64,000 nucleotides of DNA from Fimbriosthenelais zetlandica. Taxonomy: Eukaryota. A model generated the notes under the pieces. It searched no databases and was not told the DNA's origin. It saw nothing but the letters and a program-made list of their open reading frames with translations. This document shows, piece by piece, positions 3,657 to 48,466 of this stretch; position 1 is the first letter of the stretch; each line of letters begins with the position of its first letter. Both the position numbers and the translations under genes were made by a program. The stretch covers positions 56,234,001 to 56,298,000 of the forward strand of contig OZ365109.1 in NCBI GenBank assembly GCA_977030845.1, read 5' to 3'.

Positions 3657-5258
3657 CACATTTTGTGACCACCATGTTCAAGAACAAAGCCTAAAAAATC
3701 GCCGCATATTTTTTAAAAGTAAATCTTTCTGTACATGAATTTTTAACGGAACTTTCAGGTCCCTTAGTCTATAGCTCTTGTGGCTCATCATGTGCAGAAA
3801 AATTCTTGTCAACAGAAATCCTGACAGCTGACTCCAACCCACGCTCCTAAAACCATCACAATTTATTGCTGCATTAAGGGAGGCACATTTTTCTTGCTCA
3901 AAACCACAACCTCTTGTCTTTAACAAAGAACATTGGTGGAATAACTCTCACATAAAAAAGAATCACTCATCACATGCATGTGAATAAGTGACGGTGGTCA
4001 GAGAACAGCGATATAGTGAAGTGGGAGAGAAGAGGAGGGCACTTCAATCACTTCCTGAAAAAACGTTTCGGGCTTGAATTTATGAGAAAATGGACCGATT
4101 TTTACTGTAGAAAGGAGGAGTAACTTTTTGAGAGTAGGCTACAACTTGCCCCAACGAACTGGAACTTTATTTCCCAAAAGCCAATTTCTTTAAACGTTTA
4201 CAATATACTATATATTAATTAATAGTAAATAAACTGAATGAGTGAGTACAACCTACCCAGGACTATGTTATTGAAGGATTATTTATAAACATATATTTTT
4301 TTTTCAGACATGGAAAAGAAAAAGAAGACTTCATATAAGAGTTAGGAATGGAGTGCCCCTGTTATCTTTCCCCCAGGTGTCTGTCTTGAAGCTAGTGCTA
4401 ACCCATTATGCAGTCAGCTTTCCATTATTACTTCCAGAATGAGAAGTTAACTTCTCGTTCTGGAAGAACTATAGTCTACCAGATCCCAGGTCTCTCCCTT
4501 GCAAGAACCTTGAGACCGCCTTTTGGCTAGCCTTACCGTGAACTCAACCGAGGTCCCTAGCTTTACAGTCGGTAGGTGTTTGATACCTTTCTCGTTACAA
4601 AACAGGCAAAATTCGCAAGACTTTTGACGGTTGGTCAGCGAGGGGAGGTCCGTCCAGCCAAATCAGCTCCTTTGCTTCTTGCATTTTTGAGGTGTTTTCT
4701 GTAAGCGAGTCTAAAGTCGCACAGGGCCATTCGATGCTATTGGCCTGAAAGCACTGTGTACAAGCCACTTATATCTCACCTTTACGACTTTAAACTCATT
4801 TAATGAAAACGGGTGACATATTGTTGGATGGAGGCTAGCAAACTTCATCATTGATCACTACATTAGTTTTAGCGCTTGGGCAAGTATACAAGCATACATG
4901 TGCTACAATGAAACACATTTCATTTCCATCACTATCTAAAATTTCTAACAGGGGACTCACCATCTCCATCCTTTTCCTCCTGCTTCCAATCATTCCTATA
5001 ATAATCTCCTCTTTGAATTCTCTCATGCCCTTCTCTGAGTTCTCCCAGTCACCCTGTCTTACTTAGCCACTCTCCCATTCACTATACCACCCTCACCCTC
5101 CCTTATACTTTCTCCTATACCATCTCTCCCATCCCCCATGTTCTCCACTGTCTCTTATATTCTCCCGAGCACACCATTTCCCTTTCCTCCAGCCATCTCT
5201 CCCCTCTGTCCTTAACCCTGTGTCTCATCCCCTCCGAACCTCATCATCTCCTTTCTAA

Positions 5259-5450
5259 TTGGGGTATGTTTCATAAAATATTTTCAATAATTTACTAATT
5301 TCTCGCATACCCTTATTTGGGGCAATTTTCATAAAATATTTCAGAATATTATCTGTCACCCTTTTGGGGACATTCTATCTACAACTATCACTTGCACCAT
5401 CACCATATCTCTTTCTGTGTTTGGGGCATGTTTCATAAAAATATTTCCAT
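5259..5450 (+). repeat. Degenerate internal tandem repeat of the 2.2-kb element (4 units, spacing 47-58 bp)
   Basis: Units begin TTGGGG at 5259, 5317, 5364 and 5421. Three continue as TTGGGG(T/C)A(T/A)(G/T)TTTCATAAAA(A)TATTT. Mirrored in copy 2 near 21165-21355. Confidence 0.7.
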
Positions 5451-5854
5451 ACCTACATACCCGCCCCCACCACACAGACACTCACCTCAGTAATTTCCAA
5501 TACCCATCACCCTATTCGTAGCGTTATTAAATATTTCTACCACTATTTCCCATCTGTCATCTTACACCCTCCAAACAAAATTTAAGTTTAAAATATAAAG
5601 AAATTTTTTTTTTTGGTGAGTTAGTCTTAGTCAACCGGATCCATTCACCCTGGCATATCAACCCTGGCAAGGCTACACACTTGATAACCAACTGATCACT
5701 GTGGCGAATCGCTCCATGGCCGTACACACATATGATCAGTGCAAGTGTTCCACCTCTACGGATTGAACGCGGGCCCACACAAATCATGCTATGATCAGAT
5801 CGTGGGGGACTTCACCAGTCTTTCACTTGAAACTTACAGACGGGACCACTACCA

Positions 5855-5943
5855 TGGCTGTTGTGGGGGTTCGAACCCACGAGTCTGTTAAAACTTACAT
5901 CAGACTACCAGCGCCCTTGACCACTGGGCCAACGAGAACAGCC
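5855..5943 (-). ncRNA. tRNA-Leu-like Pol III cassette, counterpart inside copy 1
   Basis: Reverse complement of 20671-20759 with a few substitutions. The acceptor stem, A box and B box (GGTTCGAACCC) are retained. Confidence 0.65.
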
Positions 5944-6142
5944 ATTAGAGGTAGTAAACCAAATGGTAATATTTCCAGAACCTCCCCAACCGCGGAGGTT
6001 GATTATTCTACTGACCAGACACATTAAGCTGATACATTCGGTAGTTTTTAAAAGTTTTAAATTATGAATTGATATTAAATATATTTTCCTTTTCACCGTC
6101 GCTTCTCATGTACCACAATTTGTTGAACACCAACAGATCCAA

Positions 6143-6217
6143 GCAGTCAGTGGCCGAATGGTTAAAGAGATGAACTCTCAATACGAGGGGCATGTCAAAC
6201 TAGCTTCGAGTCCTGCC
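6143..6217 (+). pseudogene. tRNA-Ser-derived cassette with downstream T-tract (counterpart 20397-20471, minus)
   Basis: GCAGTCAGTGGCCGAATGGTTAAAGAGATGAACT...GGGG...AGCTTCGAGTCCTGCC aligns by eye with animal tRNA-Ser (GTAGTCGTGGCCGAGTGGTTAAGGCGATGGACT...CAGGTTCGAATCCTGCC). The 3' acceptor strand is lost. T4 is at 6228-6231 and T7 at 6235-6241. Confidence 0.55.
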
Positions 6218-7200
6218 ATGTTCCGCGTTTTCGCTTTTTTTCCAACTGCTTATTTATTCTAACTCCCTTACTTGTATATTGTAAGGTGCCATTTAGAGTA
6301 GTACAAGAACATGGGTTCGAATCCCAACAAGGTCATAATTTTTCTCTTTCAAACCAAATCCCCTCTTCTAACTCCCAAGCACGTTTTTTCACCTAAAGTG
6401 AGCCCCAGACCAACATCTAATTCAGGTAATATATTTCGAGAGAAAAAACCTATGTCCTTACGTTTAGGCCTACTATGTTCATCTAGGTTAAAATCTCCTA
6501 TCAACATGATTTTGCTCATTAGTAAATAATTCATCTCCTCCATTAAACTATATATTCATAAGACTATAAAGTTATTCTGGAAGTGTTTGATGGGCCACAT
6601 CATCGGCCTTGTTTGTACATCAGTCTCGTTGACTTTATAGCGTGAAGTGTCAGAGCAGGTGACGATCCGTTGGGATTCCATGCCACTGACATGTTAACAC
6701 CGTAAAAAATGGCACCGCCGAGAGGATATCTGAAATAATTATGTGGGGCGGGTCCCCAGCAAGGCAGAGCCAAGGTCCCAGTTCACAAGGGCAATCCATT
6801 TATGGCGAACAAGCTCGCCAATAAGTGTAACGCCCCCAAGAAAGACACGGATGGAAAAGTGCAAATCTTGTTATCGGAGTGGGCTTTGTGCAGAGGGCTT
6901 TTGGTGAGGACTTTTTAGGGGGAGGAGGGAAATGGAAGATGCGTTATTAAAATTATTGGAGTTTTTCTGGTGATAAATATTGTGGGTAGGTGTGGTGATT
7001 GGAAGGATGTTGTCATATGATCGATCATTTCCGGGTGTAAATCACAAGCTCCCCTCACTAAAAGGTGATCTGTTCTGACCAAGCTGACCCTGGGTACTAC
7101 TTCTAGTGGCAGCATTTTCTATTCATTTATAATTCAATCTTTTATCTCCCTCTTAGATTACTTGTTATGTAGAGAGAGGTATGATCTCTTAATATTTTAA

Positions 7201-7413
7201 AGCGGCTCTATCACCTATCAACCTTTCATTGTAAGCTATACAGAATCAGTTCATCTTTGTTCCACTGCTGATTTTGGCAGCACCTTGCAATGTGAAGTGA
7301 ACTAAGCTGTAGGCATTACTCCCTGATCCTCAAACCAAATCAGGAACTAGGTCTAACTGATATAAGATTTTACTTTGGTGGGACGTTCTTCACAGAAGGG
7401 TGATAGAGTAGCT
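7201..7413. mobile_element. 213-bp MITE with TTAA TSD and AG...CT termini (Kolobok-like)
   Basis: TTAA|AGCGGCTCTATCACC (7197-7215) ... GGTGATAGAGTAGCT|TTAA (7399-7417). The 15-bp TIR has 2 mismatches and is flanked by a TTAA duplication. Confidence 0.7.
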
Positions 7414-9099
7414 TTAAATGAATGCTTTTGTAGAGGGTCAGTTCATGTAAATATACTATAGAGATTGTGGCAAGTCCAAGCGATCTAAAACGATGGACAC
7501 AAACCATGAATATATATTACCTTAGGGTATACTCAGCATATTGCGAGGATCTATAGTAAAATACACTGGATATATACGGTGGATATATTTTCAAATCATA
7601 TCAGTTGCTCCAGCATTATACCTCATCCGTTTATGGAGCATAAAATGTGAGCCACTCCAAAATATTAGAGTAGATCATTATGTACTCTTCTCTAAGGTTT
7701 CTATCAACTAATTACTTTACCTTTTCTTATTATAGGACCGAGTATAAAACCATTAGATAGCGATGCTTACCTTATTAAAAGGCAGACATGTACCCATAAA
7801 CAACTACGTGTATAAAAAATATAGGCTATAATATTAGACGTATACCAAACCAAGCTGTATAAATATGTTGAATAAAAAATAGGCCTATAGCCTATTATAA
7901 TAGGTAATTTTTATCAAATTACAAAACGCACACAAAAGAAATCTATTCACTGCAGGGAATACATGAAACCCGAGTTTTAATAAGAGTTCCCCAAGAACTT
8001 TTTCAAGCAGTAGTCCCTAAATTGGAATGGAAACAGGCCAATGGAAGCGACCACCAGCCTCCTTTCTTGATCCCTTCCTCCCTCCCATACCTAGACCCCT
8101 GAACCTGACCTTGACCCTTGGCCGTCACCATGGTTATGACCTTTATGTTAGTACATCAAGGCAACACCGGAAGTCCCGCCCATTCCATGCTTCCCTGTGC
8201 AAGCTCCCGACTTTCAGAGTCTACAGTTATTGGTGGGCATACAACATACGCTTTTCAATATCATATTGAGCTTATAAATGCCCTAATTATATACGGGCAT
8301 ACAGAATATTCTAGAATATAGGTATAGGTCTATTGCTATTTAGATTCTGTTTAGGCTGCTGGGACAATACATACAATACATGTAGGGAGCTGGGAGCAAA
8401 ATGTATCAACCCACATTGCTCATGAATTGGTTTATTGGGAAAATGTAAAATATAGTAGCCGGTACCGAGTCGTATCAGTGAAGTTCCGATCATTCTGATC
8501 AAGGAGTTCAACAATCAAAAGATGCTGAATAAGCATAGACTAATGATGCTAGTTTAGGCACATTCACTCTGAAAATACTTTTAGACAAGGCTTGCACTTT
8601 CAATTAGAGCTGTGTGATCAGTGTAATCAGCAAGACATATTATGTGTCATTATATTAGACTCAGATAGCACAGAGAGATAAAATAAATTCAGTCATCTCT
8701 CTACTTGCGAGTCTGCCATTCCTATGCATAGGCTATGAGGTAAGACAACTATGATGTAATGTTCATACCCAAGAGACTTGGATACCTGAAGGACATTAGT
8801 CATAACCTACAGGGGCCTGCACCCAATTTACAAGGGACGGAATACAATCTATAGGAGGCTGGGCCCAGTCTACAAGAGACAAATCAAGAGGCAAAAGAGC
8901 CTACAGTATCCTCTAGGAATATTCAATTGTCAACTGTGTCAATTGTCATCCAGTTTCACAAAACATGCAAATCTCTATGAAACATTAAAAGACAGTGTCA
9001 ATAATTAAAATCTCCAAAGTTAAGAGGTAGTGAACATTACAGAATACATTTGGACGTGTATTGATATTGATTATGTATAAATATTGATTGAGGACTTAC

Positions 9100-9205
9100 C
9101 GTGAGTTTTGGGGACCCACACTATTTGTATCGTAAGATGATGAAGCTGTGATGGCCCTGTCTGGAATCTTCCCGGAGTGCATGCCCAGCGACTCCCGGCA
9201 GTGTG
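9100..9205 (-). CDS. DDR: Internal coding exon of a discoidin domain receptor (DDR1/2-like receptor tyrosine kinase); start of the discoidin/F5-8 type C domain
   Basis: The minus strand reads tttcttcattttctctgacag|CA CAC TGC CGG GAG TCG CTG GGC ATG ... GTG GGT CCC CAA AAC TCA CG|gtaag. It has a polypyrimidine tract, AG acceptor (9206-9207) and GTAAG donor (9099-9095). Translation is HCRESLGMHSGKIPDRAITASSSYDTNSVGPQNS(R), matching the C..LGM..G.IPD..ITASS motif that opens discoidin domains. The phase-1/phase-2 boundaries and SVGPQ.xR tail fit DDR as I recall it. The neighbouring coding exons were not found in the window. Confidence 0.85.
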
Positions 9206-12200
9206 CTGTCAGAGAAAATGAAGAAATAGCTATGATTAATAACCCGAGTATAACTCGATTAGTTAGAGCTTCACTTCACTTGTTATTGACACTCATACAT
9301 TAAGCAACTCACGTCCGTCATTCCAGTCATTCGCACTACCAACCAATCACATTAAAACCAAGTAGGAATCCATGGTAACCCTGGGCAGGCCTGAGAGGTC
9401 GAGGAATCTGCACCCATCTACAGACCTTGATCCTCTTCACAGATCAATCATAATTTTTCAACTAATTCTTTTAACACTTTTGAGATATTCCTCTGACAAG
9501 TGACAGATCTATATCTCTTGCTTACACAATATACCTTAGATTATTTCTTGAATAAAATAATATTTTCTTGCATCGTTATTTTCTTGAAGTGATTTTCAAC
9601 AAGTAAAGGCTTTTAGTTAATGTCTGAAGCGCTATATATGTCATCAACTCTGTGTTTCAGTAAATAAGCATTAAACCTCTAACATGGTTTGGGAAAAGAT
9701 AAAACAACAAAATATGCCTATAAATAAAGTAACAATTATGTCATCTAAAAACCTAAGTCTCTCTAAGCCTATAACATATTTCTATTTCTAAATTAAGATG
9801 GGGTGTGGAACACTCCAGTGAATAAATTGGCACTTCACATCGGAAGCGTTAGAATCCAATCACATTTGGGGTTTGAGGGGGAGAGGCTTCTCAAGCAGCC
9901 CATATTTTAGTAGAACCCAGATGATCCACGCACTGCACTATGGGAAGATGGACCGGAAATATTGACCCCGTCACCAAGGTAATGACCTTGTGGGCAGGCC
10001 AAGGTCAGATGAGCGCCCCGGAAGAACAGGCTCGCCTTTGAGCGTTTGCTTTCCAAGTGATATCCCTTTACGCTTACGATACCATATCAATGCTCGGGCC
10101 AAGTGCACCCAAAGGTTGTTTCTACAATGCAGAAAGAATTCAAATTTCACTGGATATTTGTTCACAGATGGTTAACTTGAATGTCTGTGACCCGGAGTCT
10201 GAAGTGAAGACACAGATTTTTAATCTGTGGAGGAGAGGTCATTAATACTTTTCAATTAGGCCTACATGTATTTTATTAATAGGCCTAGTGAAATATTGTC
10301 TTTAACGTTTCTTTCGTTAGATTCACGAGATACCATCAGAACGATTCTGATATTTCTTTTTCATTGAGCCTAATTTAAAAAGAAATGAACGAGTGAAATT
10401 TAAAACTTAAATATTTTGATGGACGTTTCGCTGAGGCTGAAAAATCAGAAGCAAAGAACAGCAAGTCTCTTCCTAATTTAGGACCAGCTTATTACTAAGT
10501 TTCATGGAAATTGAGATTTTCATGCCTTTCAGTGATATCTATGGTGAATAACTGATTTTCTGAGGGGATCTCTTCATTAAGTATCATGAAGATAATCTAG
10601 TTACAGCATCGATTAGGTGAGAGCTGAGTGGAATTATCAGTCTCTGAGGTCACCAGGTTGTGGCAGATGGTCAGGATTAGCAGTTTTTTCAGACCAAAAG
10701 ACATTAGATTGAACAGCGATGACTAACCAAGGCCAATATCCTTCATCTTGAAAGGGTCAGGATCCAGAAAAAATCACTTATAATTGAGCACTTGCCATGT
10801 TTCCGAACCTACTGACCAAATGGACAGCGTTTAGTTTTCTATAGGGGGATGAGATGAGGGCCTCTTTATTCAGTTACACCCCCTCCCTCCCTCTGAAACA
10901 TTTTCATCACATAATTATGCGAAATTGTAAACTTTTTGGTGACATTGAATCCATCATTTTAATGGGCAATCTTAAGAAAGTGTGATCATAATTGCCTTCT
11001 GAGGAAAGTCAAGGATCGAGCACGAAATTAATATTTGGACCCAACAAATCTTATCTGGTGGAATCAGATTCATTTTCTATATTTTATAATGAATTTTTGG
11101 TCTTTAAATGCACAGTATTTATAAGTATACATTTACACACAGAAACCATGAAGTAAATGTACCACACTTGAATCATAATGTCAAATTCACTCACGAAGTG
11201 TATATATCAGTTGGACATGGGTATAATGCCCAACTTGATGTTAGCCACTTAACCGTTTCATGCAGCTCATTATGACTCTTTTACGACTCAATGATGCATT
11301 AGAGATCCGAGATCCAAGCAAACTCCAGCTGTCAGCCCTCTGCCCCCTCTCACGCCTTCCATCCACTCCCTCGCCTCTCCACTCCTTTCAAACTCAGTAA
11401 TGGAATCCCTCAGGACACCAAAACAAATCCAAAAAATTTAATTCGTTTTTTTCACCGTTCCCTCACAGGATTTATCCAGGACTTCAAGTGCACTTAGCTC
11501 ACATTATATATGGCCAAGAGTCGGACAAAATATCTCTTTATAAGTTTTGTCCAGGAGACAATGGGTCGTGTTGGGGGAAATACACATAGAGAAGAGGGTG
11601 TCAGTCATCACCCCCTTCACTGCCCACTTGTGTTATTTCAGTAAGTGAGATACCTGTTGGCATCCCTTGAATACAAGCAACGATTGTGGGAGAAAAATGC
11701 CCTGCGAAAGGCCGGGCCATTTGACAGATTCCAAAAGGGAAAATCCTTTTTATGTCGGATCAACTTTGTCGCCATGGAAACCCGATGTGATGAACTAAAT
11801 CCCTGTGTATAGGTCAGTTCTAAAGGCAAGTTTGGAAAATTCAAACACGAGTAAACTTGTGCTGCATCTGTTTATGTATATGAGACTGGGTTTATTTAAG
11901 GTAGGTAGGAAATCCAAGAAATTTTGCCTTTTAATATAGGCTCAGCACGGTTAAAATATGTAAATATAAATAATCTAATACTAGCCATAAGGGAAATGAT
12001 GCGCATCCTTTTTAGATAATTCTTCTTTCTAATTTCACGATGACAACTCAACTGCATGGTACACAATTGTTAAAAATAGGAAGGTAATAGCCTTTGCCAG
12101 TAGGTTTCCCCCATCGTTGGCCTTCGTTTAGTTAAAGGACTTTGTTTGGTATAATTTAACTGTGCCCTATAATTGCTTTTCCCCAAACAAGGTCTTGGAC

Positions 12201-13639
12201 AATTCCCTGTTAAAATATGCCAGGTTGTTGACAGGATCTACATGACTGGTTCATTCAGTAACAATGGACTCACTTACACAGTGTGACAGGGGACATGTTC
12301 CAGGCAATGTGCATCCCAGTCGGGTTCCATTTGTCTCTTCTCCCCAGGTACCAATTGACAAGTTTTCTGTGAAACATTTCTCTGAAAAACGGGTCACCTT
12401 TGTTGAATTGTCTTTTCATGCATTGACATTGTGCATGAATGTTTCAGAACTTCCTTTAAATGATTAAGAAATTGAGCTTTCTAGAGGTCATAAATATTCT
12501 TAACAATGTAAGACAAAGACAACTTTGAAATCAATAAAAATTTTCACTGAAATCGTTCCCTTCCCTAAGGGCTTGGACATCAGAATGACCTTCTGAAATG
12601 CAAATTAGTACTTATAGGACGGATCAGATGGCTGGACAGCCTTGCCAGTCAGTATAGCCTACGGGTAAAATTAGTTCTCAAGGTTTGCTAATGTCTGGAA
12701 GGCACCCCGAAGCGACCTCCAAATGATAAGGTAAAAAGTGGCATGTGTGTAAGGGAACCCAATGGGTTCATCCCCAACTATCTACGTCTGTTCCCTGAAG
12801 GGCAATGTTGTCCATTGATAAGAAGACTTGTTTACTTCAGCCCAGGTGTGGACAGATAACTTACCGGTCAAGTGGTCAAGTAGCCAGTCATATAACCTGG
12901 CACTGACCTCAGGCATCTGTCCACTCCTGTCCTTGACCCCTATGTTGGAAGGTTTCTGGTCGATTTCCTAAGTCTCAGATTGCATTGGCGGGGAGTACTT
13001 TCAAGTGGGAATAGAATAGTAATTAATACCCAGAATCAATTATGATCAAGCTGATAGGCCTTACCTAGGTAGCTCTCGGTTGGTTGACTGGGACAAAAGG
13101 CTGGGCAATTGGATACTTGTGGATACGCCTAGCGGCCCGCCATGGCATGCATGGTTCAATGCATGTTTCATACGGGTGTTCTCTTTGGCTGGGCATTGTG
13201 TTTCAAGACAGAAAACATGGTAAAGGTTTGTGTGTTGTCTTCCTCAAAGGGAATAATGGTTGAATGAACAATGTATTTACCCTCAGTCCATCCTCAAAGA
13301 AATGAAGATATTACTACCGTATTCAGAAGTTATTTGCTCTGATTTTGATCAAGGGGTATTATATCCAGAACTTCTTCTGAACTTCGCTCAAGTCTTTTCC
13401 AAGGAATATATTCATGTACTCACAAAGAAGGCCGCTATAGTCGACAAACTCGTCAAGCTTTATAGAGATTTTTCTCGAAATAGTCTAAATAAGAATGCTG
13501 TGAGGTTATAGGCCTAATGAATATTTATTCGACAATTTCTATCTTGCGTCTCTCTTCATATTTCCATTTGACGTTTAATCTATTTTAGTCTGTCTGTCTA
13601 TCACGTTGTTTGCCCTGTCTGGTTTCCATTCTTTACCCC

Positions 13640-14040
13640 CATGTCCATCTCTCTCTAATCATTTTTCCACCTTTCACCTTATTCCTGTTAACATCACCCG
13701 ACCCCCCCTGTGGACCGCAGCCTCCAGCATATCCCCGCTACCAAGCCTGACCTCCCTGACATATCCAGAGAGATCAAAAAGGGCAAGCGGTCACTCATTC
13801 CTCCCTCATCTCCCTCCCACAATCACCACGGCTGTCAGCCCGCCCCGCACTATCCATGTCACTTAACTCTCTATTGTCAATCTACGAGTTGCTCGCATCA
13901 GCTCGCCATCTGCTCTCTGTCACCGTTCAACCCTTTCACGCCTCCCCCGCCCCCCTCCGACTGCCAGAGGCAATGCCTCAAGGCCAGTTTGATCCCATGT
14001 ATTATTCAGAAGAGCATTGCATTCGCCCAGACCAATGTTT
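13640..14040 (+). mobile_element. Decayed L2-like RT fragment
   Basis: DISREIKKGKRSLI, then LLSIYELLASARHLLSVTV...ASPAPLRLPEAMPQG (cf. WF.SYL..R...V.V....S.P....GVPQG), with frameshifts. Confidence 0.33.
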
Positions 14041-14764
14041 AATGCTGATTTTTTCCGGTGATAAATATTAGCTTTCTGCCATGGTCGGACGGCTGGGATG
14101 GACACGGCTTTCTCCTGGGCACACAAATATATTCAGTTGGAATCAAAGGGTCGGATGTGATATAGAGATGATCTGATTTCATTTCCCAATTTTCTATTTA
14201 GCTTTGCCCTTTCCCCACAAACTATACAGTGGCCACTGTATATCTCTAAGAAAAGTGGAATACATTTTTTATTATGCATTTTGCGGATATATTGAAGTTT
14301 TACAAACTCCATCAAACTCTATGATTTATAAGATATAAGTTAGAAGCATAAAAATCCTCGTCCTTCTGATAAACTTCACCGATCAATTCCATTGAAACTA
14401 AAATTACTTTGCAGAAACTTGATCAAAAACTTAATCATAGGGTCCAATGTTAAGAATATCTAAATTAAACTAGGAAGAGATCGGAATTAAAGGTTTAGAA
14501 TGGGCGACACCCAATGAGTGTGATATGCGAGCAGGGGATATAGCTGACCTTTAATTCACAAGTCCATGCACCCCAGGCAATGAATTCGATCCCTGCTCAG
14601 AAGGAGAAGATCATAACAATGATTTTGGACATTTTTACCCCCAGGCTGCATTAGCACAAAGGGAAAGGGGCAGTGGGGCCTTTATAAGGTCAATAACCCT
14701 TGACATGGTCAGGCCAAGAATTTTGAGTTGGCTTTTAGTAGGTTCATACAGAGAGGACTGTCTT

Positions 14765-14960
14765 CTGTAGCATGCAGATTGGGTGCAGTCTTCTACACAG
14801 TCTCGACTGAGTTCTGTTCCCAGCAGATCATGTGTCGCGAATACAGAGTCCGACAGATTGGGACCAACCTCATGCAGATTTCGGTCGTTTAATGCACAAT
14901 GTGCCAGATTTTGTCCTGAAGGTTTGGTTCATGCAGTCTCCCGCATACTGGTCCAGTCTC
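14765..14960 (+). repeat. Highly decayed member of the 21-bp minisatellite family
   Basis: Recurring gcagattgggtgcagtct, cagattgggaccaacctcatgcagattt and tggtccagtctc. Confidence 0.45.
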
Positions 14961-15483
14961 TTACTGAATTATCATATCCAATGTCTGCAATACTTTTTAA
15001 TGACATGCTCCAGTCCCCTTATTAAAGACTCAGTCTTTACGTTGTTATTAGTAAAATTCATTTGTTCAGGAATTTCTAGCTCACCTACTCGACAGAAAAA
15101 TGTTGAAAATGAAAGTTAATTTATTCTTGATTTGGTGGGGGGAAACGAGAGAGAAAGTGATGTAAATTACATCTCCCAGGGGGATGAATAATGGATATAT
15201 CATTCATTGTCACCCATTCTTTTTCAACAAGCAGCAATCTGTCTTTTAGAATCAGCTGGAAAAGGATCAAGGAGAAATTCCCCCAGTTCTACTGCATGGA
15301 GCTGCTTATCAATCATATTGATTCATTGGCTTTCTTTCGGCAATACATTTTCTTTTGTTTCTGACTTTGTTTTATTAATGGCTTTCTTCATCAGTTGCTG
15401 TACAAACTGTTGCAGTTCTTACTACATGCATTGTTTAACAATGTATCCACAGTTTATTTGGAAATAAAATTAGATGAATAAAA

Positions 15484-15521
15484 TAGATGAATAATCTACA
15501 CATAGATGAATAATCTACACA
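15484..15521 (+). repeat. Perfect 19-bp tandem duplication
   Basis: tagatgaataatctacaca occurs twice, preceded by a partial tagatgaataa at 15471. Confidence 0.9.
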
Positions 15522-16483
15522 TGAAAAATGTATATCTCTTTAAAATAATTTTAGAATCATTATTACAAACTAAGATCCGGTCGATAGGCCTATATTTGCA
15601 TTTTCCCCAATCAATCCAATGTAAAATGGAAGTATCTGTTTTTCAGTGTATGGTATTTGGTCATATAACACAACAAACTTGTTTTTAAATAGCTAGCAGA
15701 AAGGAAACTCCGCTATTTTCAAAGCCTCACCCCTGGGGACACTGATGGGGATTTCACAAGTGCTAAATTCTGCTGCTTGTTAAATCTCTGACGGCTGTTT
15801 CACCTGTTTGTCTACAAAATCCTCAAAAACAATCAAGGCAAAAACATCCATCACCCTGCCCCTAAGGCGATCAGGACTCAGTTCAAACGACAAACAAGTC
15901 CTACCTCACTCACCGCCCTTCACAATCACTAATCATCTCATTCCAAAGTACTTTTGGTTCCTATCACCTCTCAAAGCCTTCGGGCATATAAAACAACACC
16001 CGAACTGTAACCATTTGACTGATTTTGAGTTGTGTTCTGGTGGTTAAAGCACAAAATGGCTGGAGAATGAGGTGATTTGATTGAGCATGCAGTCCTGAAT
16101 GGAAGACATGCATGGTATTGTTTGATGTGGTAAATTACCGAAAGAAATTGGTGTAGGACTTGTTTTGGTTAATTTATGAAAATACCATGTAGATAGTTAA
16201 CAAATGCGGTTAATGTTTAATCCTAGTCTAATAAGGATACAATAAAATGGTCGACGTTTTTGATAAGAAACTAAGGTGATTGGATATGACGGTCAGTTGA
16301 CACCTTCCATGCGATATTCATCAGTCTTGACAACCTTGAATATTCGGCAGTTTCAAATGTTTCAAATGAAGGGAAACACTTTAGTTGTATTGGGTTCCTG
16401 GCATTCCACCACTTGGTGGTCTTGGTTTGGGTCGTACAAGCTGACAACAGGCCTGTGATAACTCACTCAACACAGACGAGACA

Positions 16484-16700
16484 CTAGTAGCTGGGAGGGT
16501 GGGGCAGGGCGGGGGGAGATGGGTGAATAGAGAAGATACAGACAGAGGGAGTGTGAGAGAGGAATAAGGAGATAAAGAGAGAGAAAGGGGGAGAGTCAGA
16601 TAGGAGAGTGAGTGGGGAGACAGGATAGATGGTGGCGAGAGAGGAGAGACGGGGGGTGAGAGTGGAGAGGGAGGGAGGGAGACTGAGGGAGAGAGATCCA
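16484..16700 (+). repeat. Purine-rich (GA) low-complexity tract
   Basis: Degenerate GGAGA/GAGA tract. Similar tracts occur at 18190-18385, 35570-35700, 55200-55375 and 62260-62530, and on the other strand at 36750-36970, 40480-40650, 47790-47975 and 56230-56460. Confidence 0.85.
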
Positions 16701-19700
16701 GGTGTGATACTATCCATGGTAAGTCCCACCCCACATTTGTCTTTCACACTCAACACAGACTTCACACTTCAAAACTTTCCCCAGACCGCTCCTCACTCAA
16801 ACAAGGTTAGAGGCAATGTCAATTTAATTATCTTTTTATAGCAAGAAAGAGATAACCTTGGAAACTTCCTACCAAGGGCACAAAGGGTACAAACCTACCA
16901 TATGTTTTAGACAGAGGCAGACAAATATTCGGTAACAAAATAAATAACCAACAATTGTGATTTTACATTTTTTTAAAGTACAAATTTACAAATCTTACCT
17001 TGATCTGTTTGTAGGACGGTGAATGGACATCACATGAAAGAAAGAAAAAAGGACATTAGAATATTTTCTCAAGATAAGGGTAACCGTTAACAATCCCCAC
17101 TTTCCTAAACTACTCATAAAAACTCTCCATGCTTTAGAAGGACTATTGAAGGACTTTTTATAGGGTCATGTTAACATGTTTTAATTCCATAGGCGGACCT
17201 TAATAATATAGGGCCATGGAAGGATATTAAGGGTATATGTATGTAGACCCATGTAAGGACTTAAGTGTGAGTATTTCCTATTTAAAGACGCCTCCTCCTA
17301 CATATTCCCCCAACCATTGAGTGTATGTATATTGAGTGTGATTAATGCAGTCGCAGGTCGGTAGAGGGCTTGTGGTTGGATCCCTCTAAACTTCACCTCC
17401 GCTCCTAACATCCCACCAGACCTGTCCTACACCAGGGCACGCTCCCCAGGGCAATGGTAAACATCTCCCGGGTCTACGGGAGGAAAGCAATGCAAACAAT
17501 TACCAATGCCAATCACTATATAGGTGCTCCCCAGCCCGCCAACTACCATTCAATGTCAGGCTTTTTATACGCTTTTGATAGCATTTCAAGCTGGTTGATA
17601 AAAGAATTTTCAAATGTTTTTGTTATTTATTGTCTGTATTTCCAAAACTGTGTTAGCATCTTAGCAAATATTAACATCCAGTAGCTAAGAAAAAATTAAC
17701 ATCCACTAGCTATGATTCCGGTTTTGCAGGCATTTGTGTGAAAATTGGAAGCAAAAATGAATCAAATATCCCATTGCACATTGGCAAAATGTACACATGC
17801 TGCATGTCTTTTACAGCTGTTGGTAATTACCAACAAAAGCATGATTTAAATACATTATTCTAACGGCTGTACTGTCTGTATAGATCAATATTGAATAGAA
17901 AATTGTACATTTCGCCAATAAAGGGCAGTGGGGATTGAATAATTCTGTGGTGGATTAAAGATCTGTTGACGCACATGGGGAAATCACAGATTGACGTGGA
18001 GAGTCTATTACTTATGGGAGGGAGAGAGGGAGAGTGAAGTGCGAAGGAAATCTCTGAGCATCAGGTGGGAGAGTGAAAGGGTAAATTTACAGAGTGTCAG
18101 TAGTGTGTCATGAGGGAGGGTTGGGTCGGGTAAAACAATATGATGACTGACCCAACATGACTCAGGCCCGCGTGGTGGAGCAATTAGAGATGCTTACCTT
18201 CCTTTATATGGTTGGGGTGGGGGATGGGAGGTGGTGGTAGGGAATTAGGGAAGGGTGGCGAAGGGAAGGGTGATTCGGCAGGCATGGGGTGGTGTAGGGG
18301 ATGTGAGGGTTGGAGGAAAGCAGGGAGGGGGTGGATAGTATGGGGATGACTGTGTTGAAGGGTGTAGGGGAGAGGGTGAGGGATCACAAGGTAACTGCTC
18401 CCCCTATACTAAAGGTATAAATATACTTAAAACCCTAATTCTATACCCATTAACAAATAACTGGGGATGGTGCGGATTTATCATCTGAGTACCCAAATCC
18501 AGTAACCTTGGCAACCCTAAGAGGGGTTATGGGATAATGTAGGGGGGGGGGGTGCAGAGCCAAATGAACGACATTAGTTGGCAGAATGCAAAGTGCAAAG
18601 TGGGGGCGTGCATGCAAGGATGTGCTCTGAGCAGGAGCTCGCACATCTGAGGATAATTGGTTTGTTTTGATTGGGATCTTCGTGCACCATCACAAAAGGT
18701 TTAATCTTTTAAAGTGCCCGCTACCTGAGGGTGGTAGGATCGTCCGGATTAGTAGTTAATTAACTGGATATGACCAGATGCTTCATCTAATGAAAGACAC
18801 TCACGAAATGTAAGGGAAAAGATCGGCGTGTTTTATGTGTAAGAACAATGGTAGTTTACACAATGGTATCATCCCACAGAATAAAATACTTCATATTAGG
18901 CATACAGTACATATTTCATATACCCTTTCATTCCTGTACCTTAGGCAGTATTTGTAAACTATTCAAATCATTCAATGTGCATGGAAAATGTCTACATAAA
19001 TTCTGTTTGTGTAATATGGATACCACAAACAACTGCAAAATCTACATTTTTCCAATAAGCCTAATGCTCAATGGGGTTACATAATACTGCATCCAACTCC
19101 AAATGGATTCAAAATTCAATTTAGAAAATGAACACCCTGGGTGGTAGACGGGAATATGGTAATTATTGAAAGTAAATCATCAACAATGTTCGTGTATAAG
19201 TTTCCGTCAGAAGATACAGACATGAAACCATTGTGATGGGTAACTAAATGGTGGATCTAAATCAAGGGAACTCACAATGGTTTGAAAGAAGACGCCAAGA
19301 TGGATGACATAATCCCTATCTTCAGCCAAAACTCCTAAATCAAACTTCATCATTTGCTCTCGTTACAACATCTAATTCAAGGCTGAGAGGAGAGGTAACA
19401 CATTGTAATATATCCCAGGGATGTGAGATGTGAGTAGGGGGTGAAGGAGGCCTGCTTTTATACCAGATAGGCAAGGCTATAATCTCCGCCTCAAGGACCA
19501 CCCCAGGGGCACCTGAGTGTGGAAGAAAATGGTAGGGGCGGATGGATACAACAGTACTTCGGCCCGTCCTCCTCCGCTAATGACAAGGTATGAGAAAAAA
19601 TGGTACAGAGCAAAAGAGTCCCTTTAATTCAGTAACCGACCATGGGAATGCATTCATGCGAGGAGTCTCTATGGAGCAAATATACCCCCAGGTAATACCA

Positions 19701-20231
19701 CCGAGGAAATCCAAGAAAAAATGACATAAAATATCAATATTGCACAGAAAAAATACCGTTAAGTAGTGATTAGGAAATATCATTTGTGAGCGTACCCTGG
19801 ATTGGGTTCCCTTTGGCTTAGAAAAACATTGCAACACAAAAAGTTTTTTCTGTAGACTTGAGTTTCCGATTTCCGGTGTTGATAGGGTGGGATTTTTGTC
19901 CGTGCGAGAAGGCTATTATCAAAGCATTGGAAGTTACCAGCCCCGCTTCTCAGAAACCAAACAAGGCCGATGATGTGGCCCATCAAACACTTCCAGAATA
20001 ACTTTATAGTCTTATGAATATATAGTTTAATGGAGGAGATGAATTATTAACTAATGAGCAAAATCATGTTGATAGGAGATTTTAACCTAGATGAACATAG
20101 TAAACGTAAGGACATAGGTTTTTTCTCTCGAAATACATTACCTGAATTAGATGTTGGTCTGGGGCTCACTTTAGGTGAAAAAACGTGCTTGGGAGTTCGA
20201 AGAGGGGATTTGGTTTGAAAGAGAAAAATCA

Positions 20232-20305
20232 TGACCTTGGTGGGATTCGAACCCATGTTCTTGTACTACTCTAAATGGCACCTTAACCATTTAGGCCACC
20301 GAATC
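20232..20305 (-). pseudogene. tRNA-Leu(UAG)-derived cassette with T5 terminator (5'-truncated counterpart at 6282-6335)
   Basis: The reverse complement is GATTCGG TGGCCTAAATGGTTAAGG TGCC ATTTAG AGTAGTACAAGAAC ATGGG TTCGAAT CCCAC CAAGGTC A tga TTTTT. It has an A box, perfect B box, an ATTTAG loop as in tRNA-Leu(TAG), a partly paired acceptor and a TATA-like tttatata upstream. In copy 1, 50 nt including the A box are replaced by 3 nt. Confidence 0.55.
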
Positions 20306-20670
20306 TGCTATAAGAACACGGGTGTATATAAACGTTATACAAGTAAGGGAGTTAGAATAAATAAGCAGTTGGAAAAAAAGCGAAAACGCGGAACATGGCA
20401 GGAATCGAAGCTAGTTTGACATGCCCCTCGTATTGAGAGTTCATCTCTTTAACCATTCGGCCACTGACTGCTTGGATCTGTTGGTGTTCAACAAATTGTG
20501 GTACATGAGAAGCGACGGTGAAAAGGAAAATACATTTAATATCAATTCACAATTTAAAACTTTTAAAAACTACCGAATGTATCAGCTGAATGTGTCTGGT
20601 CAGTAGAATAATCAACCTCCGTGGTTGGGGAGGTTCTGGAAATATTACCATTTGGTTTACTACCTCTAAC

Positions 20671-20759
20671 GGCTGTTCTCGTTGGCCCAGTGGTCAAGGT
20701 CGCTGGTAGTCTGATGTAAGTTTTAACAGACTCGTGGGTTCGAATCCCCACAACAGCCA
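20671..20759 (+). ncRNA. tRNA-Leu-like Pol III cassette, probable SINE head (body runs to an A-tract near 21000-21010), inside copy 2
   Basis: GGCTGTT ctcgt TGGCCCAGTGGTCAAGG tcgctggt AGTCTG-13 nt-CAGACT c GTGGG TTCGAAT CCCCAC AACAGCC A. It has a perfect 7-bp acceptor stem, A box, B box and a 6-bp central stem. Extra bases after the acceptor and an oversized central loop mean it is not a canonical tRNA. Confidence 0.65.
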
Positions 20760-23700
20760 TGGTAGTGGTCCCGTCTGTAAGTTTCAAGTGAAAGACTGGT
20801 GAAGTCTCCCACGTTCTGATCATAGCTTGATTTGCGTGGGCCCGCGTTCAATCCGTAGAGGTGGAACACTTGCACTGATCATATGTGTGTACGGCCATGG
20901 AGCGATTCGCCACAGTGATCAGTTGGTTATCAAGTGTGTAGCCTTGCCAGGGTTGACATGCCAGGGTGAATGGATCCGGTTGACTAAGACTAACTCACCA
21001 AAAAAAAAATTTATTTATATTTTAAACTTAAATTTTGTTTGGAGGGTGTAAGATGACAGATGGGAAATAGTGGTAGAAATATTTAATAACGCTACGAATA
21101 GGGTGATGGGTATTGGAAATTACTGAGGTGAGTGTGTGTGTGGTGGGGGCAGGTATGTAGGTATGGAAATATTTTTATGAAACATGCCCCAAACACAGAA
21201 AGAGATATGGTGATGGTGCAAGTGATAGTTGTAGTTAAAATGTCCCCAAAAGGGTGACAGATAATATTCTGAAATATTTTATGAAAATTGCCCCAAATAA
21301 GAGTATGCGAGAAATTAGTAAATTATTGAAAATATTTTATGAAACAAACCCCAATTAGAAAGGAGATGATGAGGTCCGGAGGGGATGAGACACAGGGTTA
21401 GGGACAGAGGGGAGAGATGGCTGGAGGAAAGGGAAATGGTGTGCTCGGGAGAATATAAGAGACAGTGGAGAACATGGGGGATGGGAGAGATGGTATAGGA
21501 GAAGGTATAAGGGAGGGTGAGGGTGGTATAGTGAATGGGACAGTGGCTAAGTAAGACAGGGTGACTGGGAGAACTCAGAGAAGGGCATGAGAGAATTCAA
21601 AGAGGAGATTATTATAGGAATGATTGGAAGCAGGAGGAAAAGGATGGGGATGGTGAGTAACCCTGTTAGAAATTTTACATAGTGATGGAAATGAAATGTG
21701 TTTAATTGTAGCACATGCTTGTACTTGCCCAAGCACTAAAACTAATGTAGTGATCAATGATGAAGTTTGCTAGCCTCCATCCAACAATATGTCACCCGTT
21801 TTCATTAAATGAGTTTAAAGTCGTAAAGGTGAGATATAAGTGGCTTGTACACAGTACTTTCAGGCCAATAGCATCGAATGGCCCTGTGCGACTTTAGACT
21901 CGCTTACAGAAAACACCTCAAAAATGCAAGAAGCAAAGGAGCTGATTTGGCTGGACGGACCTCCCCTCGCTGACCAACCGTCAAAAGCCTTGCGAATTTT
22001 ACCTGTTTTGTAACGAGAAAGGTATCAAACACCTACCGACTGTAAAGCTAGGGACCTCGGTTGAGTTCCCGGTTAAAGGCGGTCTCAAGGTTCTTGCAAG
22101 GGAGAGACCTGGGATCTGGTAGACTATAGTTCTTCCAGAACGAGAAGTTAACTTCTCATTCTGGAAGTAATAATTACTGAACTATAGAAAGGGGTAGAAT
22201 CAAAGGGAGATCTAAAGTCAAATCTTTAAAGCTGCACCAGAATCTGACGTTATCAAAGCATGCCTCATGACTTCAACCATGCTAAATAGGAATCCGGACA
22301 AAAATCATTTCCTCATTCATTTTCTCAAATTTCAATCATCTTAATTAAAGTCCTAACCCTTTAATTTAAGTATTTTCAAATCCGAAGTATAATCCAGATC
22401 AAATAAAGGCCTATTTGAATAATATGTTTTTGTGTTGGTGTAATCATGAACAGGTGCAAAATTTGACATTTTGCCGATAAGCATAAATTGTTGTAGGGAT
22501 TGGGGAATTTTGGCACCAACTGCAATCAAATTATCGCTCTGCATCGCTTGGGCAAATCGCCTCAGTGTGGGCCCGGCATAAGGGAAAAAAGCTTTAATTA
22601 GGTGTATTTGAGGGGATTGTGCAGGCAGCACGAGTAGTATCGACCACCTAGTATGAAACTAATTAAATTCCTCTACCTGAGAATTCTCAGAAATCCTCAC
22701 CTAATTCTGACTGAATCAAAGACCTTCAGTAAGATAAGGAAACCAAGTCATTTACAGTAGAATGACCAGGGAATTAGATTTGACGGATGGACTTTGTTTC
22801 GCAGGTCGCCTTTGATCTTTTTGGATGATGGTGGATGTTCACACAGGTGTGAGGATCTGATTAAGCTCACCCTCCTGCCTGTTCCCTCACACCTATACAA
22901 GATCCGAGCTGGGTTTGATCATTTTCAGACTCTGCCCTTTGGTACTGGCCCAAAAACTGATTGGTGAACTTGGCCTCGAGAAGGACTGCACCAAAGATGC
23001 ACCAGAACTGCCCTTAGAATGCCTCAGCTTCCTTCAAATTCAAAGCACAACAATCCAGCTTTAACATAGCTGAAATTAAATTGGTTTTTGTGGCCAAAAG
23101 ATCATTTTATTAATTGTAACTTTGGCTGGATCAACCAGCCCTGACTTTGAAAAGACACTTGACATTATTGCTTCCAAAAAATCAATCTTGTCTCAAACTG
23201 AGCTTTCAAATCAATCTTTTTATCAAAAGGTTTGAAATTCAAAGAACAATGGCAAAAATCTTGACCATTGGTTGATGATTGTCTTTTGGAAGACAGCTGC
23301 TGAAAATACGTCATTTCTTATTTAATGTTGGATATATTTGGATGTCTGTGGTTGGCTTAATGGGATTTCCAGCAGAGCCTGACATTTCAGCCATTGATCC
23401 GAGCAGTCTCAGGGAATTTCAATGGCCATTAATCGAAGGAATGCTCCACCTTGAATGACCTGATAAAGGCGTGAAGTTTCACACACCCACATTTGGATCA
23501 GCCTATTACACAAGATCAATGGTTAACATTTCCCAAATGAAAGCAAGTAAGTTAACCGTGACCATTTACATTATACTCTACAGCCCCTGTTTGCCTTTGA
23601 TGATTCAATATATTAAATTCAATGGGAGGCATACCAAACAGATGGTATTTGTATTTGAATCCAATCCTTCAGATCGGAAACCTAAAAACATCATTAGTAC

Positions 23701-24282
23701 GCCCGCTCAATAGTTGTGATCTGTCTAACTCTTTTAATGATAAAAACCAAGAAGGCATTTATCAACTGCGTGACAAAAGAGGTCCGTTGCATAAAAAGAT
23801 GCCCTCCACGTTGCTTAATTAACTTGGGCTGGGTATAATGACAAAACATAGGCTGGGGGTCTGACCTGGGATTGCCGAGTATGTTCATCATTTTCTCATT
23901 TGGGGTCAGCTATGTGACACGAACGGAAACAATTCATTATTCCCCATGTCCTCGAACAAACTGGAGGCACCTGTGTGTGTTACGTGGTATTTATGGGCTT
24001 ATTAAATGCTTTAAAAAGTGTATTAAATCATATCCGGTAGGGGCATTGAGGGCTTTCTGGAGCGAAGGAGTTTTGTACACATGCGTGTGAATTTTGGGGG
24101 AGGATCCTTGTTAACATTATTCAATGTTTTTATGATGGTAGTTTTTACAAAAGGTAAAGTATTTGAAGGGAAGAATGGATTTGTTCACCTTCAGTGATAA
24201 AAGGAATCGGTAAGAAAGGTAATTTGGTTAAAGCATTGGTGTAAAATAAGCCCCAGGTGCAAAGTATTTGGGACATGAGTGG

Positions 24283-24387
24283 CAGATCGGGTCTAGTCTC
24301 CTGCAGATTGGGTCCAGTCGCCAGCAGATTGGACCCAGTCTCCAACAGATTGGGCTCAGTCTCCAGCAGACTAGGCCCAGTTTGGTT
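24283..24387 (+). repeat. 21-bp minisatellite, 5 units
   Basis: cagatcgggtctagtctcctg / cagattgggtccagtcgccag / cagattggacccagtctccaa / cagattgggctcagtctccag / cagactaggcccagtttggtt. This explains the LETGPNL heptads in ORF 24145-24390. Confidence 0.85.
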
Positions 24388-33167: not shown

Positions 33168-33240
33168 AGCCCCCAGTGAGGATTGAACTCACGACCCCTG
33201 GTTTACAAGACCAGTGCTCTAGCCACTGAGCTATGGAGGC
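33168..33240 (-). tRNA. tRNA-Thr (anticodon UGU), intact
   Basis: The reverse complement is GCCTCCA TA GCTC AGTGGCTA GAGC A CTGGT CTTGTAA ACCAG GGGTC GTGAG TTCAATC CTCAC TGGGGGC T (73 nt). It forms a full cloverleaf with A and B boxes. A TTTT Pol III terminator lies at 33162-33159 and a TATA-like TTATATA at 33274-33268 (about -30). Confidence 0.96.
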
Positions 33241-48121: not shown

Positions 48122-48239
48122 ATAGATCTCCGAGCTACTCCTTAACTTTCAATAAAATTGAAAATACCTTAAAAAATCCATAGATCTCCGAGCTACTCCT
48201 TAACTTTCAATAAAATTGAAAATACCTTAAAAAATCCAT
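48122..48239 (+). repeat. Perfect 58-bp tandem duplication
   Basis: tagatctccgagctactccttaactttcaataaaattgaaaataccttaaaaaatcca occurs at 48123-48180 and 48181-48238. Confidence 0.95.
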
Positions 48240-48466
48240 CGATATTCAGGGACATTGTGGCACAGACTTTTTAACATTTTCAATCTATTTTTCTCCCAAA
48301 AAATGTACATGTACTTGGTGGATATATACATTCTATTTTTACTGAAAAATATGTTTAGCCTTTATTATGAAAGGAATTTGAACAGCGAATAAATGGATAC
48401 AGTGGTGCGTGATATTTCTCCAAATCACTAATTCCAAATATCTCTATAATTGAGGCTGCATCACTA

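What the first reader, a model, noticed from the sequence alone, without database searches (positions are those of the whole stretch)
5855..6335. Element carries a mini-cluster of three class-II tRNA-derived Pol III cassettes (Leu-like, Ser-like, Leu(UAG)-like)
Seen in sequence: within about 480 bp there are three A-box/B-box units. One is divergent (5855-5943, minus) and two are in tandem (6143-6217 and 6282-6335, plus). The tandem pair are each followed directly by oligo-T terminators like true tRNA genes. The divergent one has no T4 for about 270 nt after the head and runs into an A-tract like a SINE. It keeps a perfect 7-bp acceptor stem (GGCTGTT/AACAGCC) with an A discriminator and a 6-bp central stem, despite non-canonical spacing. 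Inference: a DNA rolling-circle element is spreading a package of Pol III promoters/TFIIIC sites. It could make short tRNA-like RNAs, act as a portable chromatin boundary, or seed new SINEs. I know of gene-fragment capture by Helitrons but not of this specific multi-tRNA cargo, so novelty is unverified.
Basis: partly seen in the sequence, partly recalled or inferred. Interest (0 to 1): 0.8.

Follow-up and report, generated by a model that had tools for sequence, protein, structure and literature searches.

The report
Decayed tRNA-derived modules inside a repeated element
A 2.2-kb mobile-element-like repeat, present twice in the window, carries three worn-down tRNA-derived pieces that keep Pol III promoter motifs but no longer pass as tRNA genes and show no sign of being protected by selection.

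Summary
The stretch lies in a 2,192-bp unit (4424-6615) that recurs inverted at 22174-19958, with 2.0% substitutions. The ends are sharp and there is no target-site duplication. An 11-nt perfect subterminal inverted repeat and a strong 5' palindrome give a HINE/Helentron-like build, not a canonical Helitron one.

All three tRNA-like units exist, but none is a tRNA gene by ARAGORN or by Rfam thresholds.
- U1 (5855-5943, minus) folds as a cloverleaf-like four-way junction with A and B boxes. It has a T4 run inside its central loop.
- U2 has an A box, a one-mismatch B box and T4/T7 runs, but no cloverleaf.
- U3 in this copy is a 3' half without an A box, because a 47-bp gap separates it from the fuller version in the other copy.

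U2 and U3 are diverged tandem monomers with a 163-bp period, like the central repeats of HINEs. The tRNA-like parts diverge between the copies as fast as the rest of the element.

Best reading: passive, decaying tRNA-derived cargo or central repeats of a non-autonomous rolling-circle-type element. Spread beyond these two copies, Pol III activity and boundary function are all untested. Unchecked first-reader notes report similar tRNA-Ser-bearing Helentron-like elements elsewhere in this genome.

The parts
4424..6615 (+). Element copy A (2,192 bp) that holds the three tRNA-derived units
   Evidence: Self-BLAST gives 4424-6615 = 22174-19958, with sharp boundaries and unrelated flanks. The copies differ by 43 substitutions and 6 indels.
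19958..22174 (-). Element copy B (inverted), with the fuller version of U3
4430..4440 (+). 5' subterminal inverted repeat ACTTCCAGAAT, lying within a 36-bp palindrome (4431-4466)
   Evidence: The inverted pair I8 is 11 nt and 100% complementary; pair I2 is the palindrome. The DNA fold gives -14.7 kcal/mol, z -7.0.
6574..6584 (+). 3' subterminal inverted repeat ATTCTGGAAGT, 31 nt from the 3' end
   Evidence: I8. A weak 4-bp GGCC hairpin follows at 6593-6608, z -0.3.
5855..5943 (-). U1: an 89-nt tRNA-shaped module with a class-II-type D arm, an A box at 5931-5921, a B box at 5877-5867 and an internal T4 at 5893-5890
   Evidence: cmscan against tRNA-Sec gives 23.8 bits (copy B 27.5; gathering score 47). 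RNAfold gives a four-way junction, z -2.2 and -3.2.
5604..5854 (-). About 240 nt downstream of U1, ending in an A11 tract (A10 in copy B): a SINE-like body and tail
   Evidence: Sequence view and T-run scan. No flanking direct repeat of 7 nt or more was found.
6143..6241 (+). U2: tRNA-Ser-like relic (A box 6151-6161, B-box-like 6203-6213) plus T4 and T7 runs; the first tandem monomer
   Evidence: There is no covariance-model hit, and the fold has z about -1 with no cloverleaf.
6282..6343 (+). U3: the 3' half of a tRNA-like unit (B box 6314-6324) plus T5; the second tandem monomer, 5'-truncated in this copy
   Evidence: The alignment of the copies shows a 47-bp gap at 6281/6282. The full form at 20232-20305 (minus) scores 22.9 bits against tRNA.
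20286..20332 (-). 47 bp present only in copy B, supplying U3's 5' half and its A-box-like TGGCCTAAATGG
6257..6267 (+). TTCTAACTCCC, repeated at 6366-6376. It lies 43 nt after U2's B box and 41 nt after U3's B box (53-54 and 52 nt from their starts), and marks the two units as tandem monomers.
   Evidence: Direct-repeat family D14. The monomer alignment gives 65% identity, z about 4.3 against shuffles.

Best explanation
The three units are decayed, tRNA-derived modules carried passively inside a 2.2-kb non-autonomous element with a Helentron-associated (HINE-like) build.

Shown:
- The element occurs twice, inverted, with precise ends, an 11-nt subterminal inverted repeat, a 5' palindrome and no target-site duplication.
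- U2 and U3 are two diverged tandem monomers with a period of 163 bp. Each consists of a class-II-type (Ser/Leu-like) tRNA-derived segment, an oligo-T run and a shared spacer motif. This matches the position and size of HINE central repeats.
- U1 is a separate, oppositely oriented 89-nt cloverleaf-like module followed by about 240 nt and an A tract.

Inferred:
- A tRNA gene with its terminator and 3' flank was taken into the element, or arose as filler DNA, and was duplicated in tandem before the two copies separated.
- Since then the modules have drifted neutrally.
- Some still carry near-consensus A and B boxes, so TFIIIC binding or short Pol III transcripts are possible. In U1 the internal T4 would tend to stop transcription after about 50 nt.
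- Nothing indicates a present function.
For: - Two copies with sharp ends.
- Perfect 11-nt subTIR and a 5' palindrome with z -7.
- The build matches the published HINE description: subTIRs, a 5' inverted repeat, a 3' stem-loop, no TSD and central repeats (PMC4067079; PMC7492417).
- B-box matches are confined to the element: 5 against 0.5 expected.
- In a whole-window cmscan at E<=10, the only sub-threshold tRNA-clan hits are in the element.
- U2 and U3 align as monomers at 65% identity, z about 4.3, and share an 11-mer at the same offset.
- All units fall below tRNA thresholds.
- Divergence is equal inside and outside the units, p=1.0, and 47 bp of U3 are missing in one copy.
Against: - Only two copies were seen, 13.3 kb apart and inverted, so mobility is inferred from architecture alone.
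- The 3' hairpin is weak (z -0.3).
- The termini are neither the canonical TC...CTRR nor clearly flanked by TT.
- The subTIR offsets (6 nt from the 5' end, 31 nt from the 3' end) are close to, but not within, the published ranges.
- Between the U2 and U3 monomers the promoter blocks are better kept than the rest: 73% against 45%, p=6e-4. This could mean past selection on Pol III elements rather than pure passivity. The result is biased by motif-anchored alignment and by what any two tRNAs share.
Confidence: 0.6

Rival explanations
1. This is a local inverted segmental duplication of an old, decayed tRNA gene cluster. No transposon is involved, and the tRNA relics are ordinary pseudogenes of a tRNA-rich genome.
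For: There are only two copies, close together and inverted. There is no TSD. No other copy turned up anywhere I could search. Unchecked notes say this genome is full of tRNA arrays.
Against: The duplicated segment starts 6 nt before, and ends 31 nt after, a perfect 11-nt inverted repeat, and its first 48 nt form a palindrome with z -7. That is very unlikely for arbitrary duplication breakpoints; my rough estimate is below 1e-4.
Confidence: 0.15
2. U1 with its 240-nt body and A tract (5604-5943, minus) is a nested tRNA-derived SINE. It retroposed into an ancestor of the element and is unrelated to the U2/U3 monomers.
For: It has a tRNA-shaped head with A and B boxes, no T4 between the head's end and the A11/A10 tract, and T-runs right after the tract. 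It runs opposite to U2 and U3.
Against: No flanking direct repeat of 7 nt or more was found. A T4 inside the head, at 5893-5890, would curb full-length Pol III transcripts where T4 terminates. No second copy exists outside the element in the window. The U1 head is significantly similar to U3 (z 5.6), though mainly at tRNA motifs.
Confidence: 0.15
3. The cassettes are functional Pol III units or TFIIIC sites under selection, acting as tRNA-like RNAs or mobile chromatin boundaries.
For: The A and B boxes are at or near consensus, with 41-43-nt spacing in U1 and U2, and oligo-T runs are present. The promoter blocks are better conserved between the U2 and U3 monomers. The U1 cloverleaf-like fold has z -2.2 and -3.2.
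Against: There is no excess conservation between the copies. U3's A box is missing in one copy. The one U2 substitution falls in its B box (6210 G>T). U2 has no tRNA fold. All units are below tRNA thresholds.
Confidence: 0.08

Closest known systems
HINEs (Helentron-associated interspersed elements, including DINE-1) with central tandem repeats, e.g. Cg_HINE and Pearl of oysters (PMC4067079, PMC7492417)
   Same: Non-coding and 2.2 kb long. It has subterminal inverted repeats, a 5' inverted repeat or palindrome, asymmetric ends and no TSD. Its internal tandem monomers are about 160 bp, against 140-180 bp in the oyster elements.
   Different: Here the monomers are tRNA-derived, with A box, B box and oligo-T. 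There are only two monomers, and an extra inverted tRNA-shaped module is present. The 3' hairpin is weak, the TT target is not evident, and no autonomous partner or copy number is known. The two papers I read do not mention tRNA-derived central repeats.
tRNA-derived SINEs
   Same: U1 has a tRNA-like head with internal Pol III promoter boxes, a body of about 240 nt and an A-rich tail.
   Different: There is no TSD, there is a T4 inside the head, and no independent copies were seen. U2 and U3 lack a body and tail and end in terminators, like genes.
tRNA pseudogenes and tRNA gene clusters associated with Helitron annotations (Arabidopsis tRNA-Cys cluster, PMC10701932)
   Same: tRNA-type units with flanks repeated in tandem inside or alongside rolling-circle-type element sequence.
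   Different: In Arabidopsis the genes are intact and expressed, and the Helitron link is uncertain. [quoted passage not shown] Here the units are decayed, and the carrier is Helentron-like and not plant.
tRNA-Sec (Rfam RF01852)
   Same: U1 has a 6-bp D stem with a 4-nt loop, is 89 nt long, and gets its best covariance-model hit from this family.
   Different: The scores, 23.8 and 27.5 bits, are far below the gathering score of 47. There is no UCA anticodon loop. It is not a member.

Membership tests
tRNA gene (Rfam RF00005 / ARAGORN) | Cloverleaf scoring at or above the curated threshold | tested here: not met
   ARAGORN at default settings finds 0 genes in either copy. There is no hit at Rfam gathering scores. 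U3 in copy B scores 22.9 bits against a gathering score of 29, and U2 has no hit at E<=10.
tRNA gene (Rfam RF00005 / ARAGORN) | Internal A and B boxes with an oligo-T terminator just downstream | tested here: inconclusive
   U1 has both boxes, but a T4 lies between them. U2 has an A box, a one-mismatch B box and T4/T7 runs. U3 has a B box and T5 in copy A; its A box is present only in copy B.
tRNA-Sec (RF01852) | Score at or above the gathering score of 47, and a UCA anticodon | tested here: not met
   Scores are 23.8 and 27.5 bits, and there is no UCA loop.
tRNA-derived SINE | tRNA-related head, body and A-rich or simple-repeat tail | tested here: met
   This applies to U1 only: head 5855-5943, body, and an A11/A10 tract.
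tRNA-derived SINE | Target-site duplications and many dispersed copies | tested here: not met
   No flanking repeat of 7 nt or more was found. No copies exist outside the element in the window. The genome-wide count could not be tested.
HINE / Helentron-associated non-autonomous element | 12-15-bp subTIRs a few nt from the 5' end and tens of nt from the 3' end | tested here: met
   An 11-nt perfect pair at 4430-4440 and 6574-6584, which is 6 nt from the 5' end and 31 nt from the 3' end. It is slightly outside the published 2-4 nt and 38-60 nt ranges.
HINE / Helentron-associated non-autonomous element | Short inverted repeat or palindrome at the 5' subTIR | tested here: met
   Palindrome 4431-4466, -14.7 kcal/mol, z -7.0.
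HINE / Helentron-associated non-autonomous element | 5-10-bp palindrome 8-35 bp from the 3' terminus | tested here: inconclusive
   Only a 4-bp GGCC/GGCC stem at 6593-6608, 7 nt from the end, z -0.3.
HINE / Helentron-associated non-autonomous element | No TSD; insertion into TT or T-rich sequence | tested here: inconclusive
   There is no TSD at either copy. The flanks are cc|ATTATT...GTTTG|t and ta|ATTATT...GTTTG|g, so the TT preference is not evident from two sites.
HINE / Helentron-associated non-autonomous element | Multiple copies, and an autonomous Rep/helicase/endonuclease partner sharing the termini | not testable with these tools
   The host genome is not searchable here, and only two copies lie in the window. 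Unchecked notes report Helentron-like elements elsewhere in the genome.
Canonical Helitron | 5' TC, 3' CTRR, a 16-20-nt hairpin about 11 bp from the 3' end, and insertion between A and T | tested here: not met
   The element begins ATTATTAC and ends CCTTGTTTG.

The most novel reading that the evidence does not exclude
A family of Helentron-type non-autonomous elements in this genome uses tRNA-gene-derived monomers, with working A and B boxes and terminators, as its central repeats. It thereby disperses Pol III/TFIIIC sites by rolling-circle transposition. This would be a DNA-transposon route to mobile Pol III promoters or insulators, and a possible source of new SINE heads. The promoter-block conservation between the U2 and U3 monomers and the unchecked notes of tRNA-Ser-bearing Helentron-like elements on other chromosomes are compatible with it.
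Probability: 0.15. Interest if true: 0.7.

Novelty: new variant of a known kind. Interest (0 to 1): 0.35.

Why it matters
Rolling-circle elements are known to capture gene fragments, and HINEs are known to spread satellite-like central repeats. tRNA-derived cargo is barely documented: a 2023 paper says tRNA capture by a Helitron-family element would be the first example of captured non-coding RNA (PMC10701932). If the pattern holds genome-wide, it would link tRNA gene arrays, satellite-like repeats and DNA transposons, and offer a way to scatter TFIIIC sites. As it stands in this window, the units are decaying relics with no sign of constraint, so the immediate significance is modest.

Tried and rejected
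- **Chance.** Rejected: there are 5 strict B-box hits against 0.5 expected, all in the element. The other A-box hits at 23353, 58951 and 63226 have no tRNA context.
- **Real tRNA genes.** Rejected by ARAGORN and Rfam. Lowering ARAGORN to 60-80% of its thresholds gives inconsistent, overlapping calls that are no better than noise.
- **tRNA-Sec.** Rejected, because the scores are below the gathering score and there is no UCA anticodon.
- **More copies within the window.** A sensitive BLAST of each segment against the window found none.
- **More copies through predicted proteins.** I searched the spurious 78-aa ORF spanning U1 against the large protein collection and found nothing.
- **More copies through exact DNA matches.** Scans of U1's 18-mer in metagenome and viral contigs gave 21 metagenome hits. 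All were chance matches or unrelated tRNA/SINE sequences sharing only the A-box region.
- **More copies through the scan's own notes.** Look-ups by sequence and by relatives came back blank.
- **Giant composite element.** I considered 4424-22174 as an element with 2.2-kb terminal inverted repeats, such as a Polinton. There are no long ORFs between the arms and no TSD.
- **Species identification.** Pfam scans of 20 ORFs gave nothing. A discoidin-motif scan found nothing. The host remains unidentified.
- **Literature.** Searches for tRNA-derived HINE central repeats found no direct precedent in the library.

Full report
**Setting.** The window is eukaryotic-looking DNA at about 40% GC, with no N and almost no long ORFs. 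I could not identify the host. Self-comparison shows exactly one long repeat: 4424-6615 recurs as an inverted copy at 22174-19958. A global alignment gives 43 substitutions (2.0%) and six indels. The similarity starts and stops abruptly, the flanks are unrelated, and no target-site duplication is seen at either copy. The finding's stretch (5855-6335) lies in the 3' third of this unit.

**The carrier.**
- The unit begins ATTATT, then ACTTCCAGAAT. A perfect 11-nt inverted partner, ATTCTGGAAGT, lies at 6574-6584, 31 nt before the 3' end (pair I8).
- The first 48 nt form a near-perfect palindrome. The DNA fold gives -14.7 kcal/mol, z -7.0.
- The 3' end has only a weak 4-bp GGCC hairpin, z -0.3.
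- This combination of subterminal inverted repeats, a 5' inverted repeat, asymmetric ends, no TSD and no coding capacity matches the published description of Helentron-associated non-autonomous elements, the HINEs or DINE-1-like elements (PMC4067079).
- It does not match canonical Helitrons, which have 5' TC, 3' CTRR and insert between A and T. The element starts ATTATTAC and ends GTTTG.
- A perfect 11-nt inverted repeat placed this way at the edges of an arbitrary duplicated segment is very unlikely. I therefore favour a mobile element over a simple inverted duplication. With two copies only, mobility is inferred, not shown.

**The three units.**
- Neither ARAGORN at default settings nor Rfam at gathering thresholds calls a tRNA in either copy. 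The only real tRNA in the window is tRNA-Thr(UGU) at 33168-33240.
- U1 (5855-5943, minus) has a perfect 7-bp acceptor stem, an A discriminator, a D arm of 6 bp with a 4-nt loop, a 6-bp central stem with a 13-nt loop, and a 5-bp T stem with an 8-nt loop.
  - RNAfold returns this four-way junction as the minimum-energy structure for copy A (z -2.2). Copy B (z -3.2) keeps the acceptor, central and T stems but forms a different 7-bp helix in place of the D arm.
  - Its best covariance-model match is tRNA-Sec, at 23.8 bits in copy A and 27.5 in copy B, far below the gathering score of 47.
  - Its A box (5931-5921) and B box (5877-5867) fit the consensus.
  - A T4 run at 5893-5890 lies between the two boxes in both copies. 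Where four T's terminate Pol III, transcripts would stop after about 50 nt.
I found no flanking direct repeat of 7 nt or more that would mark a retroposed SINE.
- U2 (6143-6227) has a consensus A box, a B box with one mismatch, and T4 plus T7 runs. It has no covariance-model hit even when 126 nt are searched alone at E<=10, and it does not fold as a cloverleaf (z about -1). From my own recollection of eukaryotic tRNA-Ser, its 5' half and its ...TCCTGCC T arm look Ser-derived. That is a lead, not a test.
- U3 as given (6282-6335) is only a 3' half with a B box and a T5 run. Copy B has 47 further bases that supply an acceptor-like 5' end and TGGCCTAAATGG. That fuller version scores 22.9 bits against the tRNA model (gathering score 29), with a mostly unpaired acceptor stem.

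**Relation between the units.**
- In copy B, U2 and U3 start 163 bp apart.
- The two 163-bp segments align at 65% identity. The score is 99 against 66.7 +/- 7.6 for shuffles, with a maximum of 88 in 300 shuffles.
- They share the 11-mer TTCTAACTCCC, which starts 52-54 nt after the start of each B box (family D14).
- They are therefore diverged tandem copies of one monomer, made of a tRNA-derived part, an oligo-T run and a spacer. They are not independent Ser and Leu genes.
- This size and placement resemble the 140-180-bp central repeats described for oyster HINEs (PMC7492417).
- Between the monomers, the A-box, B-box and T-run blocks are 73% identical against 45% elsewhere, Fisher p=6e-4. This hints at past constraint on Pol III signals. 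It is inflated by motif-anchored alignment and by what any two tRNAs have in common.
- The U1 head resembles U3 (z 5.6) but not U2 (z 0.0), mostly at tRNA motifs.

**Constraint now.**
- Between the two element copies, the tRNA-like parts carry 4 substitutions in 228 nt. The rest of the element carries 39 in 1,964 nt (p=1.0).
- The single U2 change falls in its B box.
- U3's 5' half is absent from one copy.
- Both U1 changes fall at positions that are unpaired in the centroid structure, which is uninformative with only two events.
- There is no evidence of selection on the units since the copies separated.

**Beyond the window.**
- No other copy of any module occurs in the remaining 59.6 kb or so.
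- In a whole-window cmscan at E<=10, the only sub-threshold tRNA-clan hits are in the element.
- Attempts to reach other copies failed: through a spurious ORF in the protein collection, through exact 18-mer scans of metagenome and viral contigs, and through the scan's own index by sequence and by relatives.
- Unchecked first-reader notes list several 'Helentron-type elements whose internal array is tRNA-Ser-derived' on other pieces of this genome. I treat this as a lead only.

**Comparison with the known, and verdict.**
- HINEs that carry and spread tandem repeats are established.
- I found no paper in the library describing tRNA-derived central repeats. A 2023 Arabidopsis study says tRNA capture by a Helitron-family element would be the first captured non-coding RNA (PMC10701932).
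- The most likely reading (about 0.6) is a HINE-like element with passive, decaying tRNA-derived modules. If the carrier's identity holds, this is a new variant of a known kind.
- The rivals are a plain inverted duplication of an old tRNA cluster (0.15), a nested SINE for the U1 part (0.15, not exclusive of the main reading), and functional Pol III/TFIIIC units (0.08).
- Interest is moderate to low for this locus alone. It would rise if a genome-wide survey showed a family that systematically disperses Pol III-competent tRNA-derived monomers.

Noticed in passing
window 33168-33240 (-): A genuine tRNA-Thr(UGU) gene at 68.8 bits, the only real tRNA in the window.
   Followed up: no
window 5967-6000 (+): TAATATTTCCAGAA resembles the element's own 5' end (TATTACTTCCAGAA, 4426-4439) and is followed by a 7-bp hairpin. 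This may be a second 'left end', which would make 5967-6615 an inner short element and the 2.2-kb unit a composite. The hairpin is weak (z -1.65).
   Followed up: partly
window 57501-57600 (+): A weak U6 snRNA-like match, 23 bits against a gathering score of 44. It may be a U6 pseudogene or chance.
   Followed up: no
window 5259-5451 (+): Three copies of a 31-nt motif, TTGGGGYATGTTTCATAAAATATTT..., at spacings of 58 and 104 nt, inside the element's CT-rich left part.
   Followed up: no
window 6465-6470 and 4523-4532: Indels between the two element copies: GGCCTA is present only in copy A, and a 10-bp stretch within a TTGGCTAGCC palindrome-like site is present only in copy A.
   Followed up: no
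window 48122-48243; 24282-24381: A 58-bp unit duplicated in tandem at 98% identity, and a 21-bp repeat of 4.8 copies. Neither is related to the element.
   Followed up: no
L019:803-900 (-), metagenome contig Ga0123352_10049752: A tRNA-derived, SINE-like sequence that shares only the A-box 18-mer with U1. It probably comes from an unrelated eukaryote in that sample.
   Followed up: no
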